A stretch of 64,000 nt of DNA, taken from the NCBI RefSeq assembly GCF_033153115.1, contig NW_026889854.1, positions 62,001-126,000 on the forward strand, written 5' to 3'. The position numbers and the translations under genes are program-made. This document shows, one piece after another, positions 21,073-41,400 of the stretch (the first letter of the stretch is position 1; each line of letters opens with the position of its first letter). The DNA comes from Saccostrea echinata (Eukaryota). The notes under the pieces are model-generated. The model saw only the letters and a program-made list of their open reading frames with translations. It did not search any database and was not told where the DNA came from.

Positions 21073-23599
21073 ACAAATTTCAATAATTATGGGACATAGC
21101 ATAGCAAAGTTTGGAAAAGAATTTAATATTTTTTGTGAATTTTAATGTATTTTTGATATCTTTTTTAATAACACAGAAATTCTAGGAAAAACCTTTACAA
21201 ATCAATTCAATTAATGACTTAAGTGACACGGATCTGCATTAGTAAGTATAAAGCATCATTTATTTGTCTAATTAAAAAGCACTCGTGATTTCTCCAGGGT
21301 ATCACGAGACCAATCAATCAATGGAATGGGAAAAAAGAAGAGAAACATTACCCTAGTTTTAGTTCTGGACATACACCCACTATTCCTTGTGGGACTGCGG
21401 GTGATAACACACCAGCTGCTTGTCTGCCGGTTACAGATTGTGAGTGATACGGTGCAGTATATAGAACACTGTTGAGATTGTACCAGCAAATCACCAATAT
21501 AACTGTCACAATAAAATATAGCGAAATTCTAATCTTGGATTGCGAACAACAATTAAAAAGTGTTCACATCATGTGTTGATGTATGTATGTTTTAGATTTC
21601 AGAAAGCTATTTCTGCAGGGCTTCTTTTCTGCACAAGTGGCACAAGGTGTAAAACTATCAACCAGGAATATATTTTCGGATGAAACTGCCATCTACTCTT
21701 AAAGCAATCGACCTTGTAAATTTAAAAAAGGGGGTGTCATTCATGAAATGTCACTTCCTTGAATTGTTGTTTAATTCTTGTTCGTAATGGTCATATTTTC
21801 TTTTTTCAAAAGACATGGAAACGCACCTTTTTTTCAACTTTCTATATAGTTGATCAGCTTAAGTAAAAGTATTATATATATTCATGATATACAAATTATT
21901 TAAAAAGATTTTTATATACTCAATATCAGACAAATACAAAATATTTGTGAATATTGTAGCTGATACAGAGGAAAAGATTACCAAATGGATACCTTGTAAA
22001 GCTTATCATAAAACATTAATAGAAAAAAGTTTGTCGATTCCATATTTTAAAAGAAATGGAGAAATGGCGGTCCATGCCCCAGGTGTTTTGATGGTAACTA
22101 CTTTTTTAAAAACTTTATATATCTACCTGTAGATGGAAAGCTTGAATAGTAGTAGTTTTATATAAAATATATCATGAAACATAACCTATCACTGTTTTAT
22201 TTTAAATTTAAATTTAAGTTTTAAAACTAATATCCCCAAATAGCAATACATGCAACACCCTATTATTTAATTTTTTTTTTCGCCTAATATTATTTCTTTG
22301 ATTACGATTCAACATAAGAAACACTTGGCAAATCCCTAGCACCTTTCCGATATTTGCATATTATTTTAGAACAGATATAGAAAATGAAAGTAAAATGATA
22401 CATTTGGACGAACACCACCAAATGTTTTCCCATGGACTTCCAAACAAAGTTGAGCCCCTGTAACTGATTCATATATGAAATTTTGGGCAAATGACTTTCT
22501 TGCCGTGAAACTTCGAGATTTTGCAAAACAAAACATGCCAGAAAAAATATACCGTGCTGCAGCACTTTTACTTTCAAATTCCATTTGTTAACAACTAGGT
22601 GCGTTCAGCACCAAATGAAACTCTCTAACCGAAGTGCATCCTCCCCTCAAATTTTTACCTGTAACTCCTATATATCTCAAAGTAGCCTAAGTCTTGATAC
22701 GAGATTTTTATCACCTTTATTTCACTTGTCAAAAATATAACAAGTCTTTTCTTTTAATGACCAATCATGTGCGCTGTAGCATTTTCTTCTCCGTACAACT
22801 GTGAGTGTCAAAAGTACCTGCGCCCATGTCTAGGTGTTTTTTTTTCCTCTATTTTACAAAGTTTTCTTTCAAAAATCAAACCTGGGAAAAAATTTATTGG
22901 TGTCGTATAAAGATTTCCATATTCTTCTTGAAAAAATGAATAACTTTTGCTATGCAAACATTTTAGAAGCTGTTACTTGTGTCAAAATGTCGTTCACAGA
23001 CAAACAGCTTGTAATCAAGTAAATATTCTCATGAAGAACAGCTAAAAATCCCCTGTATTCATTAGGCGACACTGGTCTCATCCCGTCACATCCATTGATT
23101 GTTCATGCAAGGTGCCCGGGTCTGAGTTAATTGTTGTTAAAATCCTCAGGGACCATAAAGGGTGTGCATAAACCATTAAGTGAATCATTGAATGTCACAA
23201 GTCCCCAGGGAAGGATTATATATGATGCCAGTCATGTTTTACATTTTTGAAAGCGAATGTGCTGTGGGAATCTACGCTTCTGTCGACCTACATGGCATCT
23301 CGTCTACCATCCAATGGTTTACAAAGAGTAAGACTATTGGTTTTAGTTCAGATGTGCTGTATTAATTATATGATACATTTTAGACTATATTAATTAGACA
23401 TAGATAGATGTTACAGATTTACTTCAATAGATTCTATCTCTTGTCTCAGCGTATGCGAATTAAAATGATAATAGAAAATAGAATTCAACAATTTCATTAG
23501 AAATATAAAGTGGAATCATTTGATATGACACCACAAAAACAAAATAAAACAACAAAATAAAAAAAGCCCACTTAATTAAGTAGAGTTTCACCATTAAAC

Positions 23600-24755
23600 A
23601 GAGTATTACAGAGGCGCAAAAATTGAAACATTGATAATGTCTCTATATAGGATTCTATATACTTGAAAGATAAATAGATGTTTGCAGATGATATCCTTTG
23701 GACAACTAGTTTTACTTCCTGATTCTCTTCATGGATTACAAAAAAATGCCTACTGTACTTTACTCATATAGTAACGATTAGAGAATTATCTGTAAATGTA
23801 AGTAAAACTAGTTCTAGGAAATCTGGACGGCTGAACCAAAATGATGACAAGGAAGTTGAAGTTGTCAATCAATTTACTTATCTTGGTCTTACACTCTCCT
23901 ATACAGGTTATTTTTTCTAGATATAAGATGTCATAGGCTTCTGAAAGAAGGAAATGTATGTTTTAGGCTTCTGAAATCACTGAAAAATGTCCATTTTAAT
24001 TACCTTGCTCGTTTATCTTTACTCGATACTTACATGTATGTAGGTAGTGTATCGAGTTACAAAAATACATTTAGAATATCTTAAAATTATGTTGAAAGTA
24101 AGAAAATATACCTCGTCATTGATGATCTATTATGATCTTCGTATTTTATCACTTTTTATTCAAAAGAAAATTCGCATTATCAAATTTTGGTTAAAGTTAT
24201 TCGAATCAGTGAATTGTGTAGCAAAGGATATCTGCCAAGATATGCTTGAGCAAACTGAAACATGTCTTAATGCAGAATATATAATGAAAAATAAACTACT
24301 GCTTTCATTAAGGTTTGGAGAAATTTGGTATTGTCAAAATCTTACAAACTTATTTTAACAGAATGTGAAATGATATAATTTTTGTCATTTGGAGGTTGAA
24401 GATGAGTACCATTTTATAATGAAATGCTCACTTTATCTTGAGTAGAGGAATTGCTTATAAAAAGTAACGTATGGGTATACGCGGAGTACGTATAAACTTT
24501 TACAACAGTTATCAACTGAAAATGTTAATGAATTAAGGGATATATTGAAATTTCTTCAGAAAGAGATTAACTTACTGTTAACTAAATATTTTATTTAAAT
24601 ATCAAATAGAAACAATGTTATGTAAAACCAATAGTATGTTAAAATATTTCATGTATGTATAATGCATTACTTCTGCATTAAGGGTTCTTTATTCTGCAAT
24701 TGTCTATTGATAATGTGATTTGTTAAGCCATATGGCTTAAGAAATAAATAAACAA
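23600..24755 (+). mobile_element. Decayed LINE (CR1/L2-group-like) RT 3' part
   Basis: MFADD (23678), EVVNQFTYLG (~23860), VEDEYHFIMKCSLY (~24395), AATA tail. Confidence 0.65.
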
Positions 24756-24762
24756 CAATAAA

Positions 24763-25560
24763 AACAAGATGTTTTTGTGAAACACTGATACCCCCGTATG
24801 ACAGCTCATGGCACAGCCTAAAGTTTCCCAAATGCAAGTGAAACTCCAAGATCAAGATATCAAAAACGTTGTTACCCAAAGAAAGGTCCTGTCACAAGGA
24901 ATACACCTGTGAAACATAAAGCCCTAGCAGCAACCATTCAGATATTATGGTCAAGGTTAACGCTCTTCGAAAATAGGCAAAACTCGGTACTAAAGAAAAG
25001 GCCTTGTCACAAGGAATGCACCTGTGAAATATAACAGCCCTTGCAGCAACAATTCAGAAATTATGGTGAAGGTTAACGTTATTAACTCGAAGGTTAACGT
25101 CATGACTGAAAAATATTTGCAATTAAGAAAATGCCTTGTCACAAGGAATGCATTTGAGAAATATGACAGCCATAGCACTAACCGTTCAAAAGTTATGGCC
25201 AAAGTTAGATTTTCAAAAGTAGGTCAAACTACAACGTTAAGATAAAAAATATATTAATTCTCAAGGAAGGTCTTGTCACAAGGAATACACATCTGAAGTA
25301 TGAGAGCCCTAGCACCAAGCATTCAAAAGCTGTGGCAAAGGTTAAAGTTTTTTTAAAGTGGGTATAACTCCATGGTCAATGTAAGAGGTCAAATTTGGTA
25401 CCCCCAAGAAAGTCTTATCACAAGAAATACACATGTGAAATATGAAAGAACTAGTTCTTACCAATGAAAAGTTTTTGCGGACAGATAGAGAAACAGACAG
25501 ACGGACGGACAAGGCAAAAATTAAATGCCCCCTAAAATTCGATTACGGGAGCATAAAAAC
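24763..25560 (+). mobile_element. HINE with internal repeats (cttgtcacaaggaatacac... x5)
   Basis: aacaagatg...gtgaaacac start, (GACG/GACA)n, terminal hairpin; relatives at 43898-44220 and 59340-59620. Confidence 0.7.
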
Positions 25561-31510: not shown

Positions 31511-33319
31511 AAATTGCACTTATACAATGTAGGTCACACAGTAGAACAGTACAACTGTGTGCAGACTGGAAGTGACGTGATCCGAAAATTTCAATTTTTT
31601 TTTTTGACGTTGTAATTAAAAAATAACGTAAAGTTTACTTTTAAAAGAAAATTATCAATATTTTCGAAGCTTAAAGCGAGATACATGCTGTACACGAACT
31701 TGTTTTAATGAATATTTATTCCCGAAAGACATAAATGCAGTACAAAGGGTTTTGTCTTTTATGGTGTTATTTATGAAACACTACAATAAGAGCGTTCTGT
31801 TTGTGTGCTGTTTTTATCTGAAAAAAGACAATTCAATGTAATTTTCTGTAATCATACTTAAAAGTTACGAATTAACGTAATTTAAAAGTTTATAAATCTG
31901 TAGTAAAGGAGGAGTTTCAATAAAGCTGTTTTTCAGCCCATCAAGAAATATTATGAAATTGTGATATGTTGTGGATAAACATCTTATCTTCCAAAAAATA
32001 TGAAAATAATTTATACTGCACATTTTCCAGTCACGTGATAATTGAAAATTTAAATATACCTTCTTCCCTATTTTTCTGGAGTACACAAATTTAAAAGGGG
32101 ATAATTGCGTTTTTGCAACGTCAAATCATAAATGAAATAGCATAAATGTTAATAAAGGCATCAAATAACCAATTGCAACATTTTTTGGGAGAACATTTAT
32201 GACATTTATTTTATGTGAAAGATTTTTTTTGTGTTTTTAAATTGTAAATTTTTTTTTTTAAAAAGAAAAGTCGGAAAATGTAAGTAGTAAGATCCCTTTC
32301 TGCTATTGCGCAACCCTAGAAGCATCATCGGTGCAGGTTTTCTCCAAAATCTTTAACCTGATCACTCTTCAAGAAAATGTAGGTCAGATCCAGCATCTGA
32401 AGCAAGTCTGATAGTGTGCATCCGAAGATGCTTCATGAAGCATGGCTGGTCAACAAGTGCTCATAGCTGCCGGAGCACTGCTCCAAAACTTTAACCTGCT
32501 TTGAAAACATTAACCTGGACATTCTTTAGCTGAAAATGCAACATCTGAAACCTGACTGGTGAGAAGGAAACACAATAGATCAGGCGACTCTGATTAATAT
32601 AGGGCATGAATATACTTGAAAAGAAAAAAAAACTTGGAACATCGATACCGACGGTATTAAAAAAGCTCCAACTTCGTGCAGGTGAGCTAAAAATGTGGCA
32701 TTAACGTTATACACTGGTGACGAAATAAGTATCGAAATGAAGATAGGAAATGATAATAATAATTTCATACTTTTTAATGATTAGAACTTTGCTCTATATG
32801 GTTTTTTTTCTTGTTTTTTTTTTTTTTTTTTTTTTGCAAATTGAATTTGATTTTCATTCATTTGAAGCTATAGAAATGTTCGCCCATCTTCTTTGCAATG
32901 GATATTGGTATGATAAGTTATCCCGGCGGAAACAAACGCTTTATCAACATGTTTAATTCTAAACTAATCACTCTCTCCAATTTGAATTTTGTGATAATAA
33001 CTCTCGAAAGAGCTGATTTATTAAGAATAGATGAGATGCAGAAATGGATCAGATTACGGAGTAATGATTAATATAGCACGATTTGAACTCAAGGACAAGC
33101 ACCTACAGAGGGGAAAAATTCATTATAAAAGCAAACCCGATGTTGAAACAGCGGAAGTCAAAAGAGATTAGGGCCAACATGAAGAATTATACAAGTAGAA
33201 TACACGAAGAAAGAATGTCATCGCGGACAAGTCATACAGTTCATAATATCCATCACATTTTTACAGTTGTACTTTTGCCTGTTAAATTTTTGCAATTTGT
33301 AACATAAATTTGTAACATA

Positions 33320-33612
33320 AATTTGGGGATTATTTCCTATCATCCTTAACAACCTGATTAATCCTACTATATATGTGTATGGTAAAATACATGTATAAAT
33401 TCTGGGATTATTGTCAACCATCCCTGATAGTGTGGGTAAATCTACTACTAGTAAAGTAATATATAAATTCCGGAGGATTATTATCTAACATCCCTCATAG
33501 ACTCGGTAAATCAGCTATAGTAATAAATGTATATAGATTCTGGAGGATTATTTTCTAACATCCCTGATGGCCTGCGTAATTCTGTTATAGTAATATATAA
33601 ATTCTGGGATTT
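33320..33612. repeat. ~60-bp tandem repeat (taaattctgggattatt...catccct)
   Basis: About five diverged copies. Confidence 0.65.
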
Positions 33613-33742
33613 CTTACTCCTCCAACGCACGTGATCCCATGTCTTTAGAGGAGAGGTCCCTGTTTGCTCTGCTTTTGATTTGTATTTTTTCTATGGCTTT
33701 TTTGAGTTTGATTACCGTTCGTTATCTCCATATTTGATTTCA
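33610..33742 (+). mobile_element. Naiad terminal fragment within a minisatellite
   Basis: ttactcctcc...tgatccca...gttcgttatctccatatt. Confidence 0.6.
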
Positions 33743-36234
33743 AACATCTTTGATAGTCTTGGTCTGCTTAATGATATACAAACAACCCAGATATAACCTG
33801 TGTAAATCTGCTATGAACATATACGAACACAGCTATTTGTAGAATACAGCTCCTTATTTTCTATCTTTAATGAGTAATCTAGAATCGCCAATAGTAATTT
33901 TTTACATGAACATCTTTTCATTTTACATGAATTAGATACATGTCTTTGCTATAGATTCCTAATTTTTCTACTATTACTATAGTACAAGTACATTGTATGT
34001 ATTATATATAATTGGTTTTTCACCACTCAACAGTAAAATTGAACCCTACTGGTCAGGTGCTCCGCTGCTCCTTTAATAGATATGACAGAGAGAATGCTAT
34101 TCCTTATAGACTGTATCATACTCATTATTTTGTAGGCGTAGAACTTGACAAACACATGAGGAAAACCGTATTATGTAATTTGATCAGTACTGAAGTCATA
34201 GCTTATTAGATTTGATTTCTGTGAGCGGGGGAGTATCATTAATACTATTATTATCTATTTATGTCATCTGATAAGTGCTAATATTTATCACTGCTGCCAT
34301 TCCTAGTGATGTTATAAGAATAACCGACTAGTGCAATGAAATAATTCAAGTGATTGGCTTGAAAACTATTTCAACTTTGTTGACACGTGTGCGAATAAAT
34401 TCTGTCGATTCGAACACTCCCTGTACATGTATTTGATAGAATAATGACGGTTAAAAACCTGTTTATGTTCTCCATCTAATCAAACTTAGCAATGTATCAA
34501 ATTCAATCCCCTTAATATATATATGGATATCACTTCAGAGTTGATAGGCTTAAGTCGACAGTACCAAGTTCATTAAACTAGATCAATATCTCATCCTTAA
34601 TATTAAAGATTATTGTATTCATTGCGATTCAAGCTTCACAAATTTATGATTGAGGAGGACCTTCGTCAAGGCAATTTTTAACCTAATCACACGTACAAAC
34701 GCGTGTAACGAAGACGACGTTCTTTCAAGATGGGGGGGGGGGTGCAAAATTGAAAACTTTGCCACTTCAGTGCAATTCCCAACTGAAATTGCTTTCCATG
34801 GGGCTGAATGGTTATCGAAAAAGGGGGAAAAAAAGAAACCACAGTCTGATAATTCTATTTTTGGATGTGATAATTCAAGAAGAATGAATCATGGTAGCTC
34901 ACATCAGGGTCAAGTTTTGCCGAGATCATTAGGTTGATAAGTACATGCTAAATCACCTATATTTCAATAAAAAGGAAATGAATTCTTTGGAAACAGAAAA
35001 AAACCATTACTGTTTTTGTTCGTTTCGATTGATTAAATCTATGCTCTAAATATGAGACTGTTTATTTGTAGGGGTGGAAGTTAATTTGAAGTTAACAAGA
35101 GAACCTTATCTTTTTTTAAAAAGATTTTTTTCTCTCTCAACATCTAATGCTTACAAGGTATGGAATAATACATTGAGTTTAGAGGTTGAAACAATAACAA
35201 GTAATCAAGGTAATCAAGGTATATTAGAATATATAGCGTATTGGAACCAAGAAATGGGCCTACATTGGACATAAATGGGTACAACTGACTTTTTATATGT
35301 AGAAATTCGAGAAAAGACCTTGAAAAGTTTAAAAAATTGGCACAAGGGCCTTAACGGTCACCTCAGTATAATACAACACTGTAAAAGATCCATAGAAATA
35401 TAAAATAATACAAACTGAAAGATGAACTATGTTTCCCAAAGCAAGAAATATAATGATAAGGGAGCAACAACATAATTAGTCTAGTGCTCCTTAATAAATT
35501 TTAAACTTGATCTAGGGATCTTTTTAGTTGCCTGTACCTGGCCCCATTTGTAACTATTAATTGTAAACTAAACAGAACAATAGTGTTTGAACACTATTGT
35601 TAAACCCATCTCATTTCCTCTCACATTGGCCTCTCTTGGTCTATGAAGAACATTTAATGTACAAAGATAAGGTAAGATAAGATTTGTCTCATTTTTATTT
35701 ATCTATAAATAACAAGTTTTTACCTGACTATTAAGAACTATGAGAGTTCTTTTTTGTATAATATATTATAAAAATTCTTGTACAAATCTCTTGACCAAGT
35801 GGTCGACTTCGATCACCCCAGACCCTGGGCAAATTTCAAAATTATTGAAGATGCACCCTTGCTCATCATACTATGCACTTAATAAATCTACCTAATACTT
35901 AGGAGCAGAGGAGAAAATGTTCAAAAACTTAATGCATATTCATTATTTCAGAAATAAATAACAAGTTTAAAAACTTCTCTGGGAAATGAAGTTGGTCGGT
36001 CACGTGATCAAATCCTGTGAAGGCGGAAGGTCTCCTTGCTCATTAAAACTATGCATTTAATTTGTTTGCTAATTACCCATGAGCAGAAAAGAAGATTTTT
36101 CAAAGAATTTAAGTATTTTCGTTATATAATCAAGTACAGCTCCTCCCCCAACACCAGTACCCCTGGCCCTGGGGCCGTAAATTTCACAATTTTTGAAGAG
36201 GCACCCTTGCTCATCATAACTACAATATACAGTT

Positions 36235-36660
36235 CGTGGTCGGCGAAGGGACACACTGAGTCGCTTCTAGCATAGGATCTCTCACCTGAGAGTCGTTGCC
36301 AGAGTGCATATGTGACTGGGTGGTGTCGGCCTGGAAGACTAGGCCGCAGACGTGTAAGGGACTTAGTCTTAAGGGTACTGAGGGGGGAGAGGTTTCTCTT
36401 AACGGCAGGGAGCTGGACTCCCGACCTTCATCGTCGGTCCGCCGGCGATGGAGGTGTCGCACGCTTTAGCGTGTGCTACCTAAAGGAGTTAGTCTATTTT
36501 TTTTAATTTAGTGCATGCTACCTAAGGGACTATTTTAACGATGTTTGCGCCTCTGCAACCGGTCACCGGTGGCGGAGACTTTCCGAGGTTCTTTTCTCTC
36601 TGTTATAACTAATCGCCTCTGGCACCGATCCGCCGGTGTCTTGGTCTTTCTTTTTTTTTA
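36235..36660 (+). ncRNA. Putative structured RNA segment of unknown identity
   Basis: GC-rich island with at least 7 hairpins; G-U pairs fall on the + strand; T-runs at ~36497 and ~36651. Confidence 0.4.
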
Positions 36661-36665
36661 AATCT

Positions 36666-37072
36666 TAACCCTAGCCCTAAAGACTACCCCTAACCTAAGC
36701 CCTAACCCTAGCGCTAAGTGTAACCCTAACCACCTTAAACCTAACCCTAACTCTAGTATTAAGCCTAACCCTAGTTTTAACCCTAACCCGTTCATCCCCA
36801 GCTCTAACCCTCACCCTATTAATCTAACCCTAACCCTTGCACTGTAACCCTAACAGCGTAAGCCCTCACCCTAGCCGTAAGTCAAACCTTAAGAGCTTAA
36901 CCCTACCCCTAACTCTAGTTCTTACCCCTTTCAGCTTAACCCTAACCCTACTTTTAACGATAACCCTAACTCAACACAAATCCGACAGCGTACCCCAACC
37001 CTAAGGCTAGCCCTAGCCCTAAACCTAACATCGTAATCCCAACCCTAACTCCAGCCCTAACCCTAGCCTTAA
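36666..37072 (-). repeat. Degenerate interstitial telomere-like array, (TTAGGG)n on the minus strand
   Basis: Many CCCTAA/CCCTAG/CCCTCA/CCTTAA units on the + strand. Confidence 0.85.
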
Positions 37073-37849
37073 CATCCCATCTCAAAGTCATAGATGTTTT
37101 ATGCCAAAATTATTTGAAATTGGATCAGTGGTTTCAGAGAAGAAGCTGAAAATGTTCAAATGTTAACTGGCGACAAACAACGCAAGACGACGGACGAAAC
37201 AGATCGCAATGGGTCACCTTTGTGACTGAGGTGACTTAAAAAGGGGAAAGTGACACTCAACGACAATGATTAGAAGAAGACCGTCCTTAGCGACAACTAT
37301 AAGACCATATGAGCTCCCTATATAATTCAGTAAAATTTAAAAAAAAAAAGAAATGCTGTACCCCTTTATCATACAATCAGCAAGTCCTGAAACTTGCCTC
37401 CATTTTCGTCCCTTGAAGTGCCTAAAGTTAAAAACTGTGCTAGTTTCGAACTATGATACGTATTTTTAAAGAGTTTACAGTTTCAGATGATCAGTAATTT
37501 TGTCTAGAAATATTTTTAACATGCACAAGTCAAAATCTGAGTACTTGGACTGGACTAAAATGATGAAAGTTGCGGGTCTTGTAGAAGTACATTTATTTTA
37601 ATTCACTAATTTAAATAGAGAGAGCCTATGTGTAAAACAAGCTAAATAATACTCAGTGGTCAAGGTCCAATGCAGCTGAATCGTAAAATGAGAACATAGC
37701 TAAATCCGCAACACTTATAAAATCATTTCCCAAAACTACTTGAATGAAATATGACCATGAAAAATGCTTTGGGAGGTACTGCCCAGTCGCACAACTAAAA
37801 CTACTTTAAAGTTTCAGTGATGTCCTATTTTATTTATTTCGTCAAGGAT

Positions 37850-38460
37850 GAGGGTGAAGATAGTGAATCATGATTAATTACAATGAATCCTACATGTATA
37901 ACAACACAAACTGTGTGAACAGGGAAAAAACCCCAAAACCCCCGGACCCCTGGAGAAAGCCTCCCCTGTCACCTGTAAGCCATCATTACTGATCAGGTAA
38001 ACGGAATTATCCGTAGTAAAAATAAGTATTAAACACAATGGCCTAACAATTGGTATGAAAAATGCCAGTCAAAATACGACCCGAAAATATGCTGTGTTTG
38101 CAAAAGGAATCAATATAACGATCCTACAATTTGCGGAATGCTGACTTAAACGAAATTGGCCCTGTTACATCAACTTATTTGTTAATAGCCTGACTTGGTT
38201 TAAAAATTGAGCATGCTCTTGCGTATCGAATCAGCTGGGAGAGGTAAAAAGCAGATATAGGTGATAATTGAATGTTACTATTTAAATGAGGAAGGTGGCG
38301 ATAAAAAGCTGAATTCGTCTCTATTGTCCTATACTCTAGTTGTTAGTTGGCATTAACGTTTAAAATCAGCAAAACATTCAAGTATGAAACAGATGAGGTT
38401 AACTCTGTGATGTCTTTATTTCAAATGATTTTTTTTTTTGCTTTTGAGTCAACAAATGAT
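37850..38460 (-). mobile_element. Degenerate Naiad fragment
   Basis: gcatgctcttgcgtatcgaatcagctggga and ggcctaacaattggtatgaaa matches. Confidence 0.7.
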
Positions 38461-41400
38461 TTCTATAGATCCGTTAAATTTTGTAAGAGGTAATGATTTA
38501 TAAATTCCTAAACAGTAAACATGTACTTATGCAGTGATACTTTAATGTTTCAATGACGGTGAAAAATATTTTGACGTACATTAAAGTCTGTGTATTTTTC
38601 GTAAGTAGCGAATATTATGGTCATCCTGAAAATTGCAAAATTTCAAACCTCGGGGTCTCATGGAGAGAATTAAGAAAATTAAAATGTATTCTAACGACAT
38701 TCCTACACTAACGAAATGTGGAAGCAAAACAGTAAGTGAGCACGAGGATAAAACTGAGTGTAGAATACATTCAGTTATAAAATGATTAAAAATAGGTACG
38801 CAAAACAAAAACATGGCCGTTCAACAAGTTTGATATATTCGTCGAACACATGAAACAGTATGAACTTGTTCTATCCAACTTCTCGACTTTTTCTCTCTCT
38901 CCTTCTCTCTCTCTCTCTCTCTGCAATCAAGTTCAAAGACCGAGAAAAAAATTGAATATAATTGTAAACAAGTTGTACAGTTTTTATATTTTGTTTGCTT
39001 CTTTACACCTTTTCACTTTCTTAAAACACTTTCGTGTAAAACCCGGTATGTACAGGGGTTTTCCTCCAAGCTTGAGTTGTCTTGCAATATATATATATAT
39101 CGATGATAATTCAGTTTTGAGCAGGGTGTCCTGAAAATTCAAGTCGATATGAATGGACTGACTTTGGGTGATCATATGGAAATAAGCTTCAATTTTGAAT
39201 CACGATTCCTACATTGAAAAAAGCTCGATTTCATGGAACAATACACCAACTTCAGAATTTTAACTCAAAATGATGTAAGGTTGAACATAAGTCGAATGTT
39301 TGTGTACATTGCCAGGCTTCGTCAATGTCATTTTCTACAAAGATCATTATACTATACAAATCGGCATTACGTCTGGGAATAGCTCGGCAGAAGATGACGT
39401 AATAATAGTCAGATATATTAGTTGTTTACTTCTGGTGATCACTTTCCCTAGAGTTGCCCACTGAGGCTGTTAAAAGAGGTATCGTAGCGTATTGGCACCC
39501 TTCCCAGCACACTGTCACCTGTTCTAACAAATTACTATACTCTCTTCTCTTCATTATTTAATATAAAATGAATTATGGTCAAGTTTGCTTTGGAAGGAAA
39601 GCAAAATTCATTTCGCATTATGTATAAAAGGACTGTCCCTGGCTCTGTATGAAGATTCCGTCAACTCTAAAAGTTAGGTTTTAAAGAATTGTGAAAAAAA
39701 TGTTGATAGAACAATCTGTGGTTGAAAATTTGGAGCAGTAGAAATCAGTGTAAAAATTTCAATAGTTCTATACAAGGAAAATCTAATTATGCATCAGTTT
39801 AACAGAAAACATTGGAGTTTTGTCATGACTTGGAAAAGTAGTGATATTCTTGCATCATTAAAATAGGTAATGACTACGATATAGTTTTTGAGGTGAAAGC
39901 TTTTAAAGTGAAGAAAATACTAGTATCTTACGATGTTAAAGAATTAAGGCACCTCGGGGCATGAGTGTGTTTTATTCTGTTTTTAATATCTAGTAGCATT
40001 GTGATTTTTGCAAAAAGTAATCTGTCTGGAATGAAACAAACCTGCCAATGTCAAAAAGAGAAAAATAATGAATGAAGAATGCCAGACTTTAATGTTTTAA
40101 GATCGAATATGTCATTGAAACACTATTCAACGGAGACACATAGACTTCATTTCTTCTGGAACATAATATTAGGTGACACTTTTTCTTTGACTCCAAGGAC
40201 TTGTCTAGTGTGCAAAATCCACAAATACAGGCGGAGTGAGGAATCAATATTTAGACGATTTAATGGAAAAACATTCTGCCACTTTAGTACAGGAGTCATT
40301 CATAAGTTTTCTTATGTCAAAATGTAAATGTCAGCAGATCTGAAACATCGCACATTAATCTGGAACTAACTTCTTTAAAAAGGGGTAAGATAGAATTTAT
40401 TTTAAATTATTCTAAGAAGAGTTTTTAAAATCTTTATGACGTAGTCTTTGGGTAAATAATATTTTTAAATAAAGATTAATAAATTCAAATTTTACTGATT
40501 CTGCTGATGGTTTCAAACCATTTTCCGTCGGTCATTATTTTGAGATACATGTAATGTGTTACGACAGTATATCGACTGTCTCTGGAAATGCATTCTGATT
40601 TTTTATTTTTTCCATTGGAGATGGTGTTTCAAAGATGAAATCAATCAGAAATAAGTTACCACTATCCGTTACAATTCTGCATCTTGGTAGCGTTCTTCAA
40701 ATTCTAACAATTTATCACAACACCAGCGAGAACCCATTTTATACATGCATGTATATGTATGTATATGTATCTTTTATACAAAAACTTACAAAAACGAATA
40801 TACAAAACTAGCAAGTAAAAATTCAAATTAGAACATAATCTCCTCTGAAATTGAAGGCAGAGGAGAATAAATGCAAATTTTATTTTCAAAAAAATATCCC
40901 GTATGTGAACTGTACCTCAGTGGTGTAAATGAAAAAGTTTGCGGGAAGGAGTTGATATTTTGTAGTATAAAATGAATGTCCGTAGGATGCCTATATCGAT
41001 CTCTCTTTAGGCCGTTGGAATATTTACCTGCATGACTTTCTAGATGTTGAATCAAGTCAAGGGATATGTTGTATGTTTCGTTTTCTATGTTACACAATGT
41101 ATACATGTATGTATATGAATCAATAATTGAGAAACGTTTTCACAGAGATAAAAGAATGGCAACTCTAACGAAAGCTTAATCATTCTTTCAGGTGACATAG
41201 AGTGGAAACAAAAAAAGTACGTATATTCTCTCTCTCTCTCCGTGTGTGTGTATGTGTGATCAAAGATTGTCTTACCAAATGCATTAGTCATACTTTTTGT
41301 ACTATCAAGTGCTTCCACATTACAAATCCAGACTAAATATTATCTGTCATCGACCTTGGACTCTGTCAAGGTTAATTGAATTTTACCTATTTTATTTTTA

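What the first reader, a model, noticed from the sequence alone, without database searches (positions are those of the whole stretch)
36235..37075. Structured GC-rich RNA-like module fused to a reverse-telomeric (CCCTAA)n tail and captured inside a HINE
Seen: in AT-rich DNA, a ~430 nt GC-rich island contains successive hairpins: CGGCCTGG/CTAGGCCG (36327-36346), GGGAG/CTCCC (36408-36422), ACCTTCATCGTCGG/CCGGCGATGGAGGT (36424-36455), GCACGCT/AGCGTGT (36459-36474), CTCTGCAACCGG/CCGGTGGCGGAG (36551-36577) and GGCACCG/CGGTGTC (36621-36640). These stems hold six G-U pairs and no C-A pairs on the + strand. After a T-run come ~400 bp of degenerate CCCTAA. The block replaces part of a host HINE repeat unit with no visible TSD. 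Established: endonuclease-less Penelope-like elements (Athena/Terminon type) carry structured 3' ends followed by reverse-complement telomeric repeats that anneal to the G-overhang, and TRAS-type LINEs lie on the C-rich strand. Inference: the G-U bias points to selection on a + strand RNA; this may be the 3' end of an undescribed telomere-targeted retroelement or telomere-associated ncRNA, copied here by double-strand-break repair.
Basis: partly seen in the sequence, partly recalled or inferred. Interest (0 to 1): 0.8.

Follow-up and report, generated by a model that had tools for sequence, protein, structure and literature searches.

The report
Stray ribosomal-DNA spacer piece in transposon
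The hairpin-rich GC island with its reversed telomere-like tail is an old, decaying copy of the spacer that follows the 28S ribosomal RNA gene in this genome, pasted into a common transposon; it is ordinary genomic debris, not a new telomere-seeking element.

Summary
In detail: all six hairpins, the T-run, about 400 bp of degenerate CCCTAA, and the replaced piece of the host repeat are at the stated places.

The block (window 36235-37073) is colinear, tail included, with the stretch about +45 to +930 after the 28S 3' end of this genome's own rDNA unit. All 26 array copies I examined carry the same order: 28S end, boxes and hairpins with T-runs, then a CCCTAA-like tract. So the module-to-tail fusion was inherited from the rDNA spacer. 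It was not made at a telomere.

The stems are conserved, with compensatory changes, because they belong to the pre-rRNA 3' external transcribed spacer (3'ETS) and terminator region. That explains the + strand G-U bias.

The window copy is the most diverged copy (75-77% identity). It has lost boxes and T-runs. It replaces about 116-131 bp of a HINE-like repeat, with no target-site duplication (TSD) and no poly(A). It exists at one locus only; contig C9 is a near-identical haplotig or recent duplicate.

There is no RT ORF, no hammerhead or other Rfam match, and no telomeric location. No public reads could be listed, so expression and read support are untested.

Verdict: an rDNA spacer orphon, probably filler DNA from break repair. 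Low interest.

The parts
35330..35792 (+). 5' arm of the host HINE-like repeat
   Evidence: Matches the stretch that precedes the satellite array in other copies (L035, L043, L047; 67-74% identity).
35815..36222 (+). Central 168-bp satellite-like units of the host repeat, about 2.4 units
   Evidence: Matches tandem copies at 168-bp steps in all 10 of 10 compared loci. The first look found 5354 candidates genome-wide, of which 40 were scored.
36223..36235 (.). Left junction zone between host repeat and rDNA-derived block
   Evidence: BLAST homology to the host ends at 36222. By alignment, the host motif ACAGTT runs to 36234. rDNA homology starts at 36235-36236. No duplication.
36235..36660 (+). 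rDNA 3'ETS/terminator-region fragment, starting about +45 nt after the 28S 3' end of the source
   Evidence: Colinear with L031:2480-2960, C54 and C7 copies. 75-77% identity to every other copy.
36424..36455 (+). Hairpin H3, 14 bp with a TCCG loop
   Evidence: 14/14 pairs in the window and in canonical rDNA. The first pair is A-U in the window and C-G in rDNA, a compensatory change.
36475..36504 (+). Box 1 (a variant of the repeated 21-nt rDNA box) plus a T8 run
   Evidence: Aligns to the first of 4 boxes in canonical rDNA.
36517..36531 (+). Box 2, truncated
   Evidence: Exact 15-nt box core, found once in the window copy against 4 times in each of 26 array copies.
36551..36577 (+). Hairpin H5, the degraded copy of the first rDNA hairpin+T-run
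   Evidence: 11/12 pairs with an A.G mismatch, and the T-run is lost. Canonical rDNA has a 14-bp stem followed by T10+.
36621..36659 (+). Hairpin H6 plus an interrupted T-run, the copy of the second rDNA hairpin+T-run
   Evidence: 7/7 pairs. G-C changes to A-U in the two C7 copies, a compensatory change. Canonical rDNA has a 14-bp stem followed by T10.
36661..37073 (+). Degenerate C-strand telomere-like tract inherited from the rDNA intergenic spacer
   Evidence: Single colinear HSPs run from the module through the tail: window 36474-37068 to L031:2750-3362 (68%), and 36516-37015 to the C54 copy (72.5%). Shared non-telomeric islands are visible.
37074..37088 (.). Right junction zone
   Evidence: rDNA homology ends at 37068-37073. 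Host 3' arm homology starts at 37088-37089. The 15 nt in between may be diverged host sequence.
37089..37242 (+). 3' arm of the host HINE-like repeat
   Evidence: 79-86% identical to 9 of the 10 compared copies, where it lies 161-169 bp after the last satellite unit. The first look found 939 candidates.

Best explanation
The block 36235-37073 is an orphon, a stray and decaying DNA copy of this genome's own ribosomal spacer. It covers most of the 3' external transcribed spacer and terminator region that follows 28S, from about +45 nt. It also covers the ~400-bp C-strand telomere-like tract that lies next in the intergenic spacer.

The hairpins, the + strand G-U pairs and the T-runs are features of the Pol I transcript and its termination region in the source. 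The tail was already joined to them in the rDNA.

Shown: the fragment sits inside a HINE-like (Helentron-type) repeat and replaces about 116-131 bp of it.

Inferred: it was copied in as filler DNA when a double-strand break in that repeat was repaired by end joining or short template copying.

Inferred: it has no function at this locus.
For: 1. Copies in the genome. Of 75 matches, 5 are dispersed full-length or near full-length copies. The rest lie in tandem arrays with a ~14 kb period. In one array Rfam places the 28S end at L031:2434 and the next 18S at 9827. The homologous stretch starts about 45 nt after the 28S end.

2. Array copies. 26 of 26 (L007-L032) have the 28S end 242-244 nt before the first of 4 boxes, and 25-32 CCCTAA/CCCTAG hexamers in the 900 nt after the last box.

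3. The tail is homologous. Single HSPs run from the module through the tail to both canonical rDNA and the C54 copy.

4. The stems are conserved. 91.3% of cells are paired, against 32-48% in the slid controls. 5 pairs change on both sides. Canonical rDNA folds better (z -4.17). It carries two 14-bp hairpins, each followed by T10+.

5. Decay in the window copy. It is the most diverged copy, at 74.7-76.8% identity to all others. It has 2 boxes instead of 4, one T-run lost and one mismatch in H5.

6. The host repeat. In 9 of 10 compared copies the 3' arm follows the last satellite unit by 161-169 bp. In the window the gap is 887 bp. There is no TSD and no poly(A).

7. One locus only. C9 is colinear with the window at ~100% identity over at least 31 kb.

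8. Known kind. rDNA fragments inside TEs and pseudogenised rDNA pieces are described in passages of PMC10946416. The filler-DNA model for internal acquisitions in Helitron-type elements is in a Discussion passage of PMC7492417.
Against: - No reads could be examined. No run was listed, so junction support rests on two near-identical contigs, which may not be independent.
- Expression is untested.
- Identity to today's rDNA is only 68-83% locally. The source was therefore an older or edge-of-array variant, not the present consensus. The window, C7 and C54 copies share a ~23-nt segment that the canonical unit lacks.
- The right end of the fragment falls within a few bases of the distal end of the telomere-like tract. 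A random break model does not predict that.
- The insertion mechanism is inferred from junction anatomy only.
Confidence: 0.93

Rival explanations
1. The module is the structured 3' end of an endonuclease-less Penelope-like (Athena/Coprina/Terminon-type) or other telomere-targeted retroelement, or a telomere-associated ncRNA. Its CCCTAA tail pairs with the G-overhang.
For: - The geometry fits: sense module followed by C-strand repeats.
- The stems are conserved with G-U pairs on the + strand.
- TTAGGG is the genome's long perfect repeat: 3688 matches to an 8-unit pattern against 0 for the control.
Against: - All array copies follow 28S (26 of 26).
- No ORF longer than 95 aa lies in 33000-40000. 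The two short ORFs were not scanned against Pfam.
- No hammerhead or any other Rfam hit on the module at E<=10.
- The window copy is interstitial. The C9 twin lies at 12.0 Mb of its contig.
- The tail is colinear with the rDNA tract rather than a fresh telomere addition.
Confidence: 0.02
2. Same identity (rDNA spacer), different route. The HINE/Helentron machinery itself acquired the fragment, and the composite element could transpose.
For: - The fragment lies between the central repeats and the 3' arm of an otherwise complete-looking element.
- Helitron-type elements are known to take up internal segments (PMC7492417 Discussion passage).
Against: - Only one locus carries the composite. The second copy has identical flanks over at least 31 kb.
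- Part of the element was deleted at the same place.
Confidence: 0.15
3. Same identity, RNA route. A read-through pre-rRNA 3' fragment, cut about 45 nt after 28S and ending in CCCUAA repeats, was reverse-transcribed into the break.
For: - The fragment starts close to the 28S end and stops at the distal edge of the telomere-like tract.
- That such boundaries could be RNA processing or termination points is my own inference.
Against: - No poly(A) and no TSD, and a target deletion of ~116-131 bp.
- The C7 copies have different boundaries, starting at or near the 28S end and stopping ~55 bp into the tract.
- In the source, several hairpin+T-run and box+T-run elements lie upstream of the tract. If they terminate Pol I, little RNA would reach it.
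Confidence: 0.05
4. Assembly artefact: a chimeric join of rDNA reads into a repeat.
For: rDNA and HINE repeats are both hard to assemble. No reads were available.
Against: - The same junctions occur in two contigs (C105 and C9) that differ at a few positions (99.6% over 3164 columns).
- The block is 17-32% diverged from array rDNA, so array reads could not have produced it.
Confidence: 0.02

Closest known systems
Dispersed rDNA pseudogene fragments ('orphons') outside the arrays
   Same: A piece of the rDNA unit sits outside the array, escapes homogenisation and decays. PMC10946416 (passages seen) cites pseudogenised rDNA copies and fragments as contributors to junk DNA.
   Different: This piece carries no rRNA-coding part. 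It is purely 3'ETS plus intergenic spacer, and it includes a telomere-like tract that makes it look like something else.
rDNA-derived modules inside transposable elements (Pokey IGS-derived repeats, SINE28, 5S-derived SINEs)
   Same: An rDNA spacer fragment embedded in the internal region of a non-autonomous element (Table 2 and text of PMC10946416, passages seen).
   Different: Those modules are part of propagating families. Here the composite is at one locus only, and part of the host element was deleted.
HINE / non-autonomous Helentrons of bivalves (Cg_HINE)
   Same: The host repeat has a left arm, central 140-180-bp-class tandem repeats (168 bp here) and a right arm, at very high copy number. 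The paper reports no TSD and discusses filler-DNA acquisition (PMC7492417, abstract and passages).
   Different: I could not compare with the published consensus sequences, which are in figures and supplements I did not see. The family name and the terminal motifs are therefore untested.
Endonuclease-less Penelope-like elements (Athena, Coprina)
   Same: A sense-strand module followed by reverse-complement telomeric repeats (Introduction passage of PMC8557442).
   Different: No RT, no adjacent hammerhead ribozyme, not at chromosome ends. The repeats are a fixed 400-bp degenerate tract shared with the rDNA spacer.
Interstitial telomeric sequences associated with nucleolus organisers
   Same: Telomere-type repeats physically linked to rDNA. 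My paper searches listed cytogenetic reports, of which I saw titles and abstracts only.
   Different: Here the tract is resolved at sequence level, inside every spacer examined, in C-strand orientation directly after the terminator-like hairpins. I found no paper describing this for a mollusc in searches. The one bivalve rDNA paper I checked (PMC6730533) has no occurrence of 'telomer', 'TTAGGG' or 'CCCTAA'.

Membership tests
rDNA spacer-derived orphon | Colinear sequence homology with the genome's own rDNA unit | tested here: met
   Window 36235-37073 aligns colinearly with L031:~2480-3362 and with the C54 and C7 copies. Identity is 74.7-76.8% over 396-448 compared columns.
rDNA spacer-derived orphon | The homologous stretch in the source lies inside a bona fide rDNA unit | tested here: met
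   Rfam LSU ends at L031:2434 and SSU starts at 9827. The unit is 14,050 bp by the spacing of hits. 26 of 26 array loci show the same order.
rDNA spacer-derived orphon | Located outside an array, flanked by non-rDNA sequence | tested here: met
   Both flanks are arms of a dispersed repeat. Rfam finds no rRNA anywhere in the 64-kb window.
rDNA spacer-derived orphon | Decay relative to homogenised array copies | tested here: met
   It is the most diverged copy. It has 2 of 4 boxes, a lost T-run and a stem mismatch.
EN-less Penelope-like element 3' end (Athena/Coprina type) | Reverse transcriptase ORF upstream in the same element | tested here: not met
   Only 2 ORFs of 90 aa or more lie in 33000-40000, of 95 and 94 aa. 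They were not scanned against Pfam. Upstream of array copies is 28S.
EN-less Penelope-like element 3' end (Athena/Coprina type) | Hammerhead ribozyme motif adjacent to the reverse-complement telomeric repeats (feature as stated in PMC8557442) | tested here: not met
   The Rfam scan of 35000-38500 at E<=10 gave 5 weak hits. None was on 36235-37075 and none was a hammerhead.
EN-less Penelope-like element 3' end (Athena/Coprina type) | Copies at chromosome termini, attached to G-strand overhangs | tested here: not met
   Copies lie after 28S in arrays, or are interstitial: the window, C9 at 12.0 Mb, C7 at 5.78 and 6.10 Mb, C10 at 10.1 Mb.
EN-less Penelope-like element 3' end (Athena/Coprina type) | Stretch of reverse-complement telomeric repeats at the 3' end | tested here: met
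   Present, but inherited from the rDNA spacer.
HINE / non-autonomous Helentron (host repeat) | Left arm, central satellite-like tandem repeats, right arm, in fixed orientation | tested here: met
   9 of 10 compared loci show satellite then 3' arm in the same order and orientation. 4 of 10 (L035, L040, L043, L047) also show the 5' arm within the locus fetched.
HINE / non-autonomous Helentron (host repeat) | Terminal motifs (subterminal inverted repeats, 3' palindrome), insertion at TT without TSD | tested here: inconclusive
   I only saw, by eye, a 6-of-7-bp inverted repeat at 37212-37218 / 37230-37236, just before the homology ends at 37242. Termini and insertion site were not analysed, and the published consensus was not available to me.

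The most novel reading that the evidence does not exclude
The interesting object may be the source, not the orphon. Every rDNA spacer examined carries a ~390-bp C-strand telomere-like tract directly after two terminator-like hairpin+T-run elements.

That tract could act as a homology patch and fragile site through which rDNA and chromosome ends exchange sequence. A G-strand 3' end invading it and copying toward 28S would produce exactly the arrangement seen at the edge of the C54 array: 28S, 3'ETS, then a cleaner CCCTAA run, then unique DNA. Breaks at the tract's distal edge would explain why the window fragment also ends there.

Against this: only 1 of the 3 array edges I looked at ends at the tract. 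C59 ends inside 28S and C61 ends in the spacer subrepeats.
Probability: 0.08. Interest if true: 0.55.

Novelty: new member of a known kind. Interest (0 to 1): 0.14.

Why it matters
For the finding itself, it matters little. It removes a false lead (a new telomere-targeted retroelement or ncRNA). It also gives a rule for the rest of this genome: a GC-rich hairpin island followed by T-runs and degenerate CCCTAA is the signature of the rDNA 3' spacer, and stray pieces of it will recur.

It also documents the anatomy of the rDNA termination region, which could be tested experimentally as Pol I terminators:
- four repeated boxes with T-runs;
- two 14-bp hairpins with T10+;
- a telomere-like tract.

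The link between that tract and array edges is a small, checkable lead on how nucleolus organisers relate to chromosome ends.

Tried and rejected
- Rfam. A permissive scan of 35000-38500 and a gathering scan of the whole window found nothing on the module.
- Folding z-scores. They do not separate the strands for the window copy, so I did not use energy as evidence of strand.
- Public reads. None was listed, so junction support by reads and expression could not be tested.
- Array edges. I tested the idea that the telomere-like tract marks the edges of rDNA arrays in general. Only 1 of 3 edges fits (C54 yes; C59 and C61 no). I keep it only as the low-probability novel case.
- C7 copies. I considered that they mark a regulatory reuse, because they lie ~300 bp upstream of a 394+ aa ORF with a signal-peptide-like start. 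The ORF has no Pfam match and the pair is a 97.6% segmental duplication. Not pursued.
- Literature. Searches found no sequence-level description of a telomere-like tract in a mollusc rDNA spacer. That is a statement about those three searches only.
- Organism. It was not identified.
- Supplements. The Cg_HINE consensus tables of PMC7492417 were not requested or seen. They would be needed to name the host repeat family.
- Earlier findings. Look-ups by words gave nothing relevant.

Full report
**1. Observation**

Reading 35600-37700 and the composition profile confirm a GC-rich island. GC is 0.52-0.53 at 36200-36599, against 0.27-0.39 around it. The island ends in a T9 run at 36651-36659. About 400 bp of degenerate CCCTAA follows, up to 37073.

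In the window copy they hold 6 G-U pairs and no C-A pair.

Tandem Repeats Finder sees the tail only as a weak period-6 array (59% matches).

**2. Where else it occurs**

I searched the window's own genome (923 Mb, 425 contigs) with 36235-36660. This gave 75 matches, from 88 candidates of which 40 were scored. Five are full-length or nearly so:

| Place | Identity | Locus |
|---|---|---|
| The window itself (C105) | 100% | L001 |
| C9 at 12.0 Mb | 99% | L002 |
| C7, first place | 77% | L003 |
| C7, second place | 76% | L004 |
| C54 at 52 kb | 72% | L005 |

One 109-bp piece lies on C10. All the other matches fall in tandem arrays with a period of about 14 kb, on many small contigs and at the ends of C59 and C61.

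In one array (L031 = C205:40000-49999), Rfam places the end of the large-subunit rRNA at 2434 and the start of the next small-subunit rRNA at 9827. The arrays are therefore the rDNA, with a unit of 14,050 bp.

**3. The tail belongs to the rDNA spacer**

The sequence after 28S in L031 reads, in order:
- about 165 nt of spacer;
- a 14-bp hairpin with a TCCG loop;
- four copies of a 21-nt box, each followed by a T-run;
- two 14-bp GC-rich hairpins with TCCG loops, each followed by T10 or more;
- about 390 bp of degenerate CCCTAA (2975-3365);
- GC-rich subrepeats.

All 26 array loci examined (L007-L032) have this layout. The 28S end lies 242-244 nt before the first of four boxes. There are 25-32 CCCTAA/CCCTAG hexamers in the 900 nt after the last box.

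BLAST gives single colinear alignments that run from the module through the tail:
- window 36474-37068 to L031:2750-3362 (68%);
- window 36516-37015 to the C54 copy (72.5%).

Non-telomeric islands inside the tail are shared between the window and the C54 copy. The 'fusion' of a structured module to a reverse-telomeric tail is therefore an inherited feature of the rDNA spacer. The window block corresponds to about +45 to +930 after the 28S 3' end.

**4. The stems**

I aligned the window, the two C7 copies, the C54 copy and canonical rDNA. With the 3' partners slid by 1-3 columns, only 32-48% pair. Five pairs change on both sides, including:
- A-U to C-G at the base of H3;
- G-C to A-U in H6.

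Caveats:
- Only five sequences were available, and two are 99.4% identical.
- The structure was derived from one of them.

Canonical rDNA keeps H3, H5 and H6 perfectly paired and folds with z = -4.17. The window copy folds with z = -2.56 on + and -3.33 on -.

The + strand of the window block is the rRNA-sense strand. This explains the G-U bias: the selected RNA is the Pol I pre-rRNA 3' external transcribed spacer. That the boxes and the hairpin+T-run elements act in Pol I termination is my inference from position and form, not a result.

**5. Decay of the window copy**

The window copy is the most diverged of all copies, at 74.7-76.8% identity over 396-448 compared columns. By comparison, C54 is 83.2% identical to canonical rDNA. 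The window copy keeps 2 of the 4 boxes, has lost the T-run after H5, and has a weakened H6 tail.

The window, C7 and C54 copies share a ~23-nt segment that the canonical unit lacks. The source was therefore an older or edge-of-array variant.

**6. Host repeat and junctions**

The left flank (35815-36222) is about 2.4 units of a 168-bp satellite-like repeat, with 5354 first-look candidates. The right flank (37089-37242) belongs to a 155-bp segment with 939 candidates.

In 9 of 10 compared loci the two occur together in the same order. The 3' arm starts 161-169 bp after the last satellite unit. In the window that distance is 887 bp.

I aligned three intact copies against the window. They show 131 nt between the host motifs that flank the insertion. 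In the window, 854 nt (36235-37088) stand there instead. So about 116-131 bp of host were lost and about 839 bp of rDNA spacer were gained. There is no target duplication and no poly(A).

The architecture matches that described for Cg_HINE non-autonomous Helentrons: left arm, central repeats, right arm, very high copy number. That paper also discusses filler-DNA acquisition of internal segments (PMC7492417, abstract and passages). I did not test terminal motifs.

**7. One locus**

C9 is colinear with the window, in inverted orientation and at about 100% identity, at window positions 22000-25000, 35000-38163 and 50000-53000. C105 and C9 are therefore haplotigs or a very recent large duplicate. 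The composite exists at one locus.

This gives some support to the junctions, since two contigs carry them at 99.6% identity over 3164 columns. It is no substitute for reads. None could be listed.

**8. Other stray copies and array edges**

- **C7.** The two copies are a 97.6% segmental duplication. They start at or near the 28S end and stop about 55 bp into the tract.
- **C54.** This copy is the last, rearranged unit of an rDNA array that begins at the contig start. The rDNA ends there exactly after a cleaner CCCTAA run, at about C54:53,749.
- **C59 and C61.** The array edge on C59 lies inside 28S (C59:2,144,996). The edge on C61 lies in the spacer subrepeats (C61:1,907,387).

The tract is therefore not a general array boundary (1 of 3 edges).

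**9. Test of the retroelement reading**

A passage of PMC8557442 states the features of endonuclease-less Penelope-like elements. They attach to G-rich overhangs, helped by reverse-complement telomeric repeats with adjacent hammerhead ribozymes.

Here:
- No ORF longer than 95 aa lies in 33000-40000.
- There is no hammerhead or any other Rfam hit on the module.
- No copy sits at a chromosome end.
- The repeats are shared with the rDNA.

TTAGGG is indeed the genome's long perfect repeat: 3688 matches to an 8-unit pattern, against 0 for the reversed control. The tail is thus rightly called telomere-like.

**10. Verdict**

This is an rDNA spacer orphon inside a HINE-like repeat, most likely filler DNA from break repair. 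rDNA fragments in transposable elements and pseudogenised rDNA pieces are a known kind (PMC10946416, passages).

The finding is real as a sequence feature and ordinary in meaning. The only mildly novel point is the anatomy of the source spacer, with its telomere-like tract directly after the terminator-like elements. My three paper searches did not find this described for a mollusc.

Noticed in passing
L031:2435-3365 (G000:C205:42434-43364), and all 26 array loci L007-L032: Anatomy of the rDNA 3' spacer: a 14-bp hairpin, four 21-nt boxes each with a T-run, two 14-bp GC hairpins with TCCG loops each followed by T10+, then ~390 bp of degenerate C-strand telomere repeat. These look like candidate Pol I termination elements.
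   Followed up: partly
L005:2740-2879 (G000:C54:~53,610-53,749); L049-L051: An rDNA array starts at the beginning of the 69.7-Mb contig C54. It has rearranged units: an 18S joined to several short 28S fragments. It ends exactly after a cleaner CCCTAA run, followed by TE-rich unique DNA. The orientation is what copying from a chromosome end primed in the spacer tract would give.
   Followed up: partly
G000:C59:2,144,996 and G000:C61:1,907,387 (L058, L054): Two further array-to-unique-DNA edges. One lies inside 28S and one in the spacer subrepeats, so array edges are heterogeneous.
   Followed up: partly
L003:1-1182 (-) and the twin L004 (G000:C7 at 5.78 and 6.10 Mb): An rDNA 3'ETS fragment lies ~300 bp upstream of an open frame of at least 394 codons. 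The frame has a signal-peptide-like start and no Pfam match. The whole 3.4 kb is duplicated at 97.6% identity.
   Followed up: partly
window 22405-22833: A 429-bp stretch is 92% identical to a segment repeated in tandem arrays of ~2.44-kb period on C315, C291 and C47. There is no Rfam family and no convincing ORF.
   Followed up: no
I did not examine it. Naiads are endonuclease-bearing, and the paper I read says they lack canonical hammerhead motifs.
   Followed up: no
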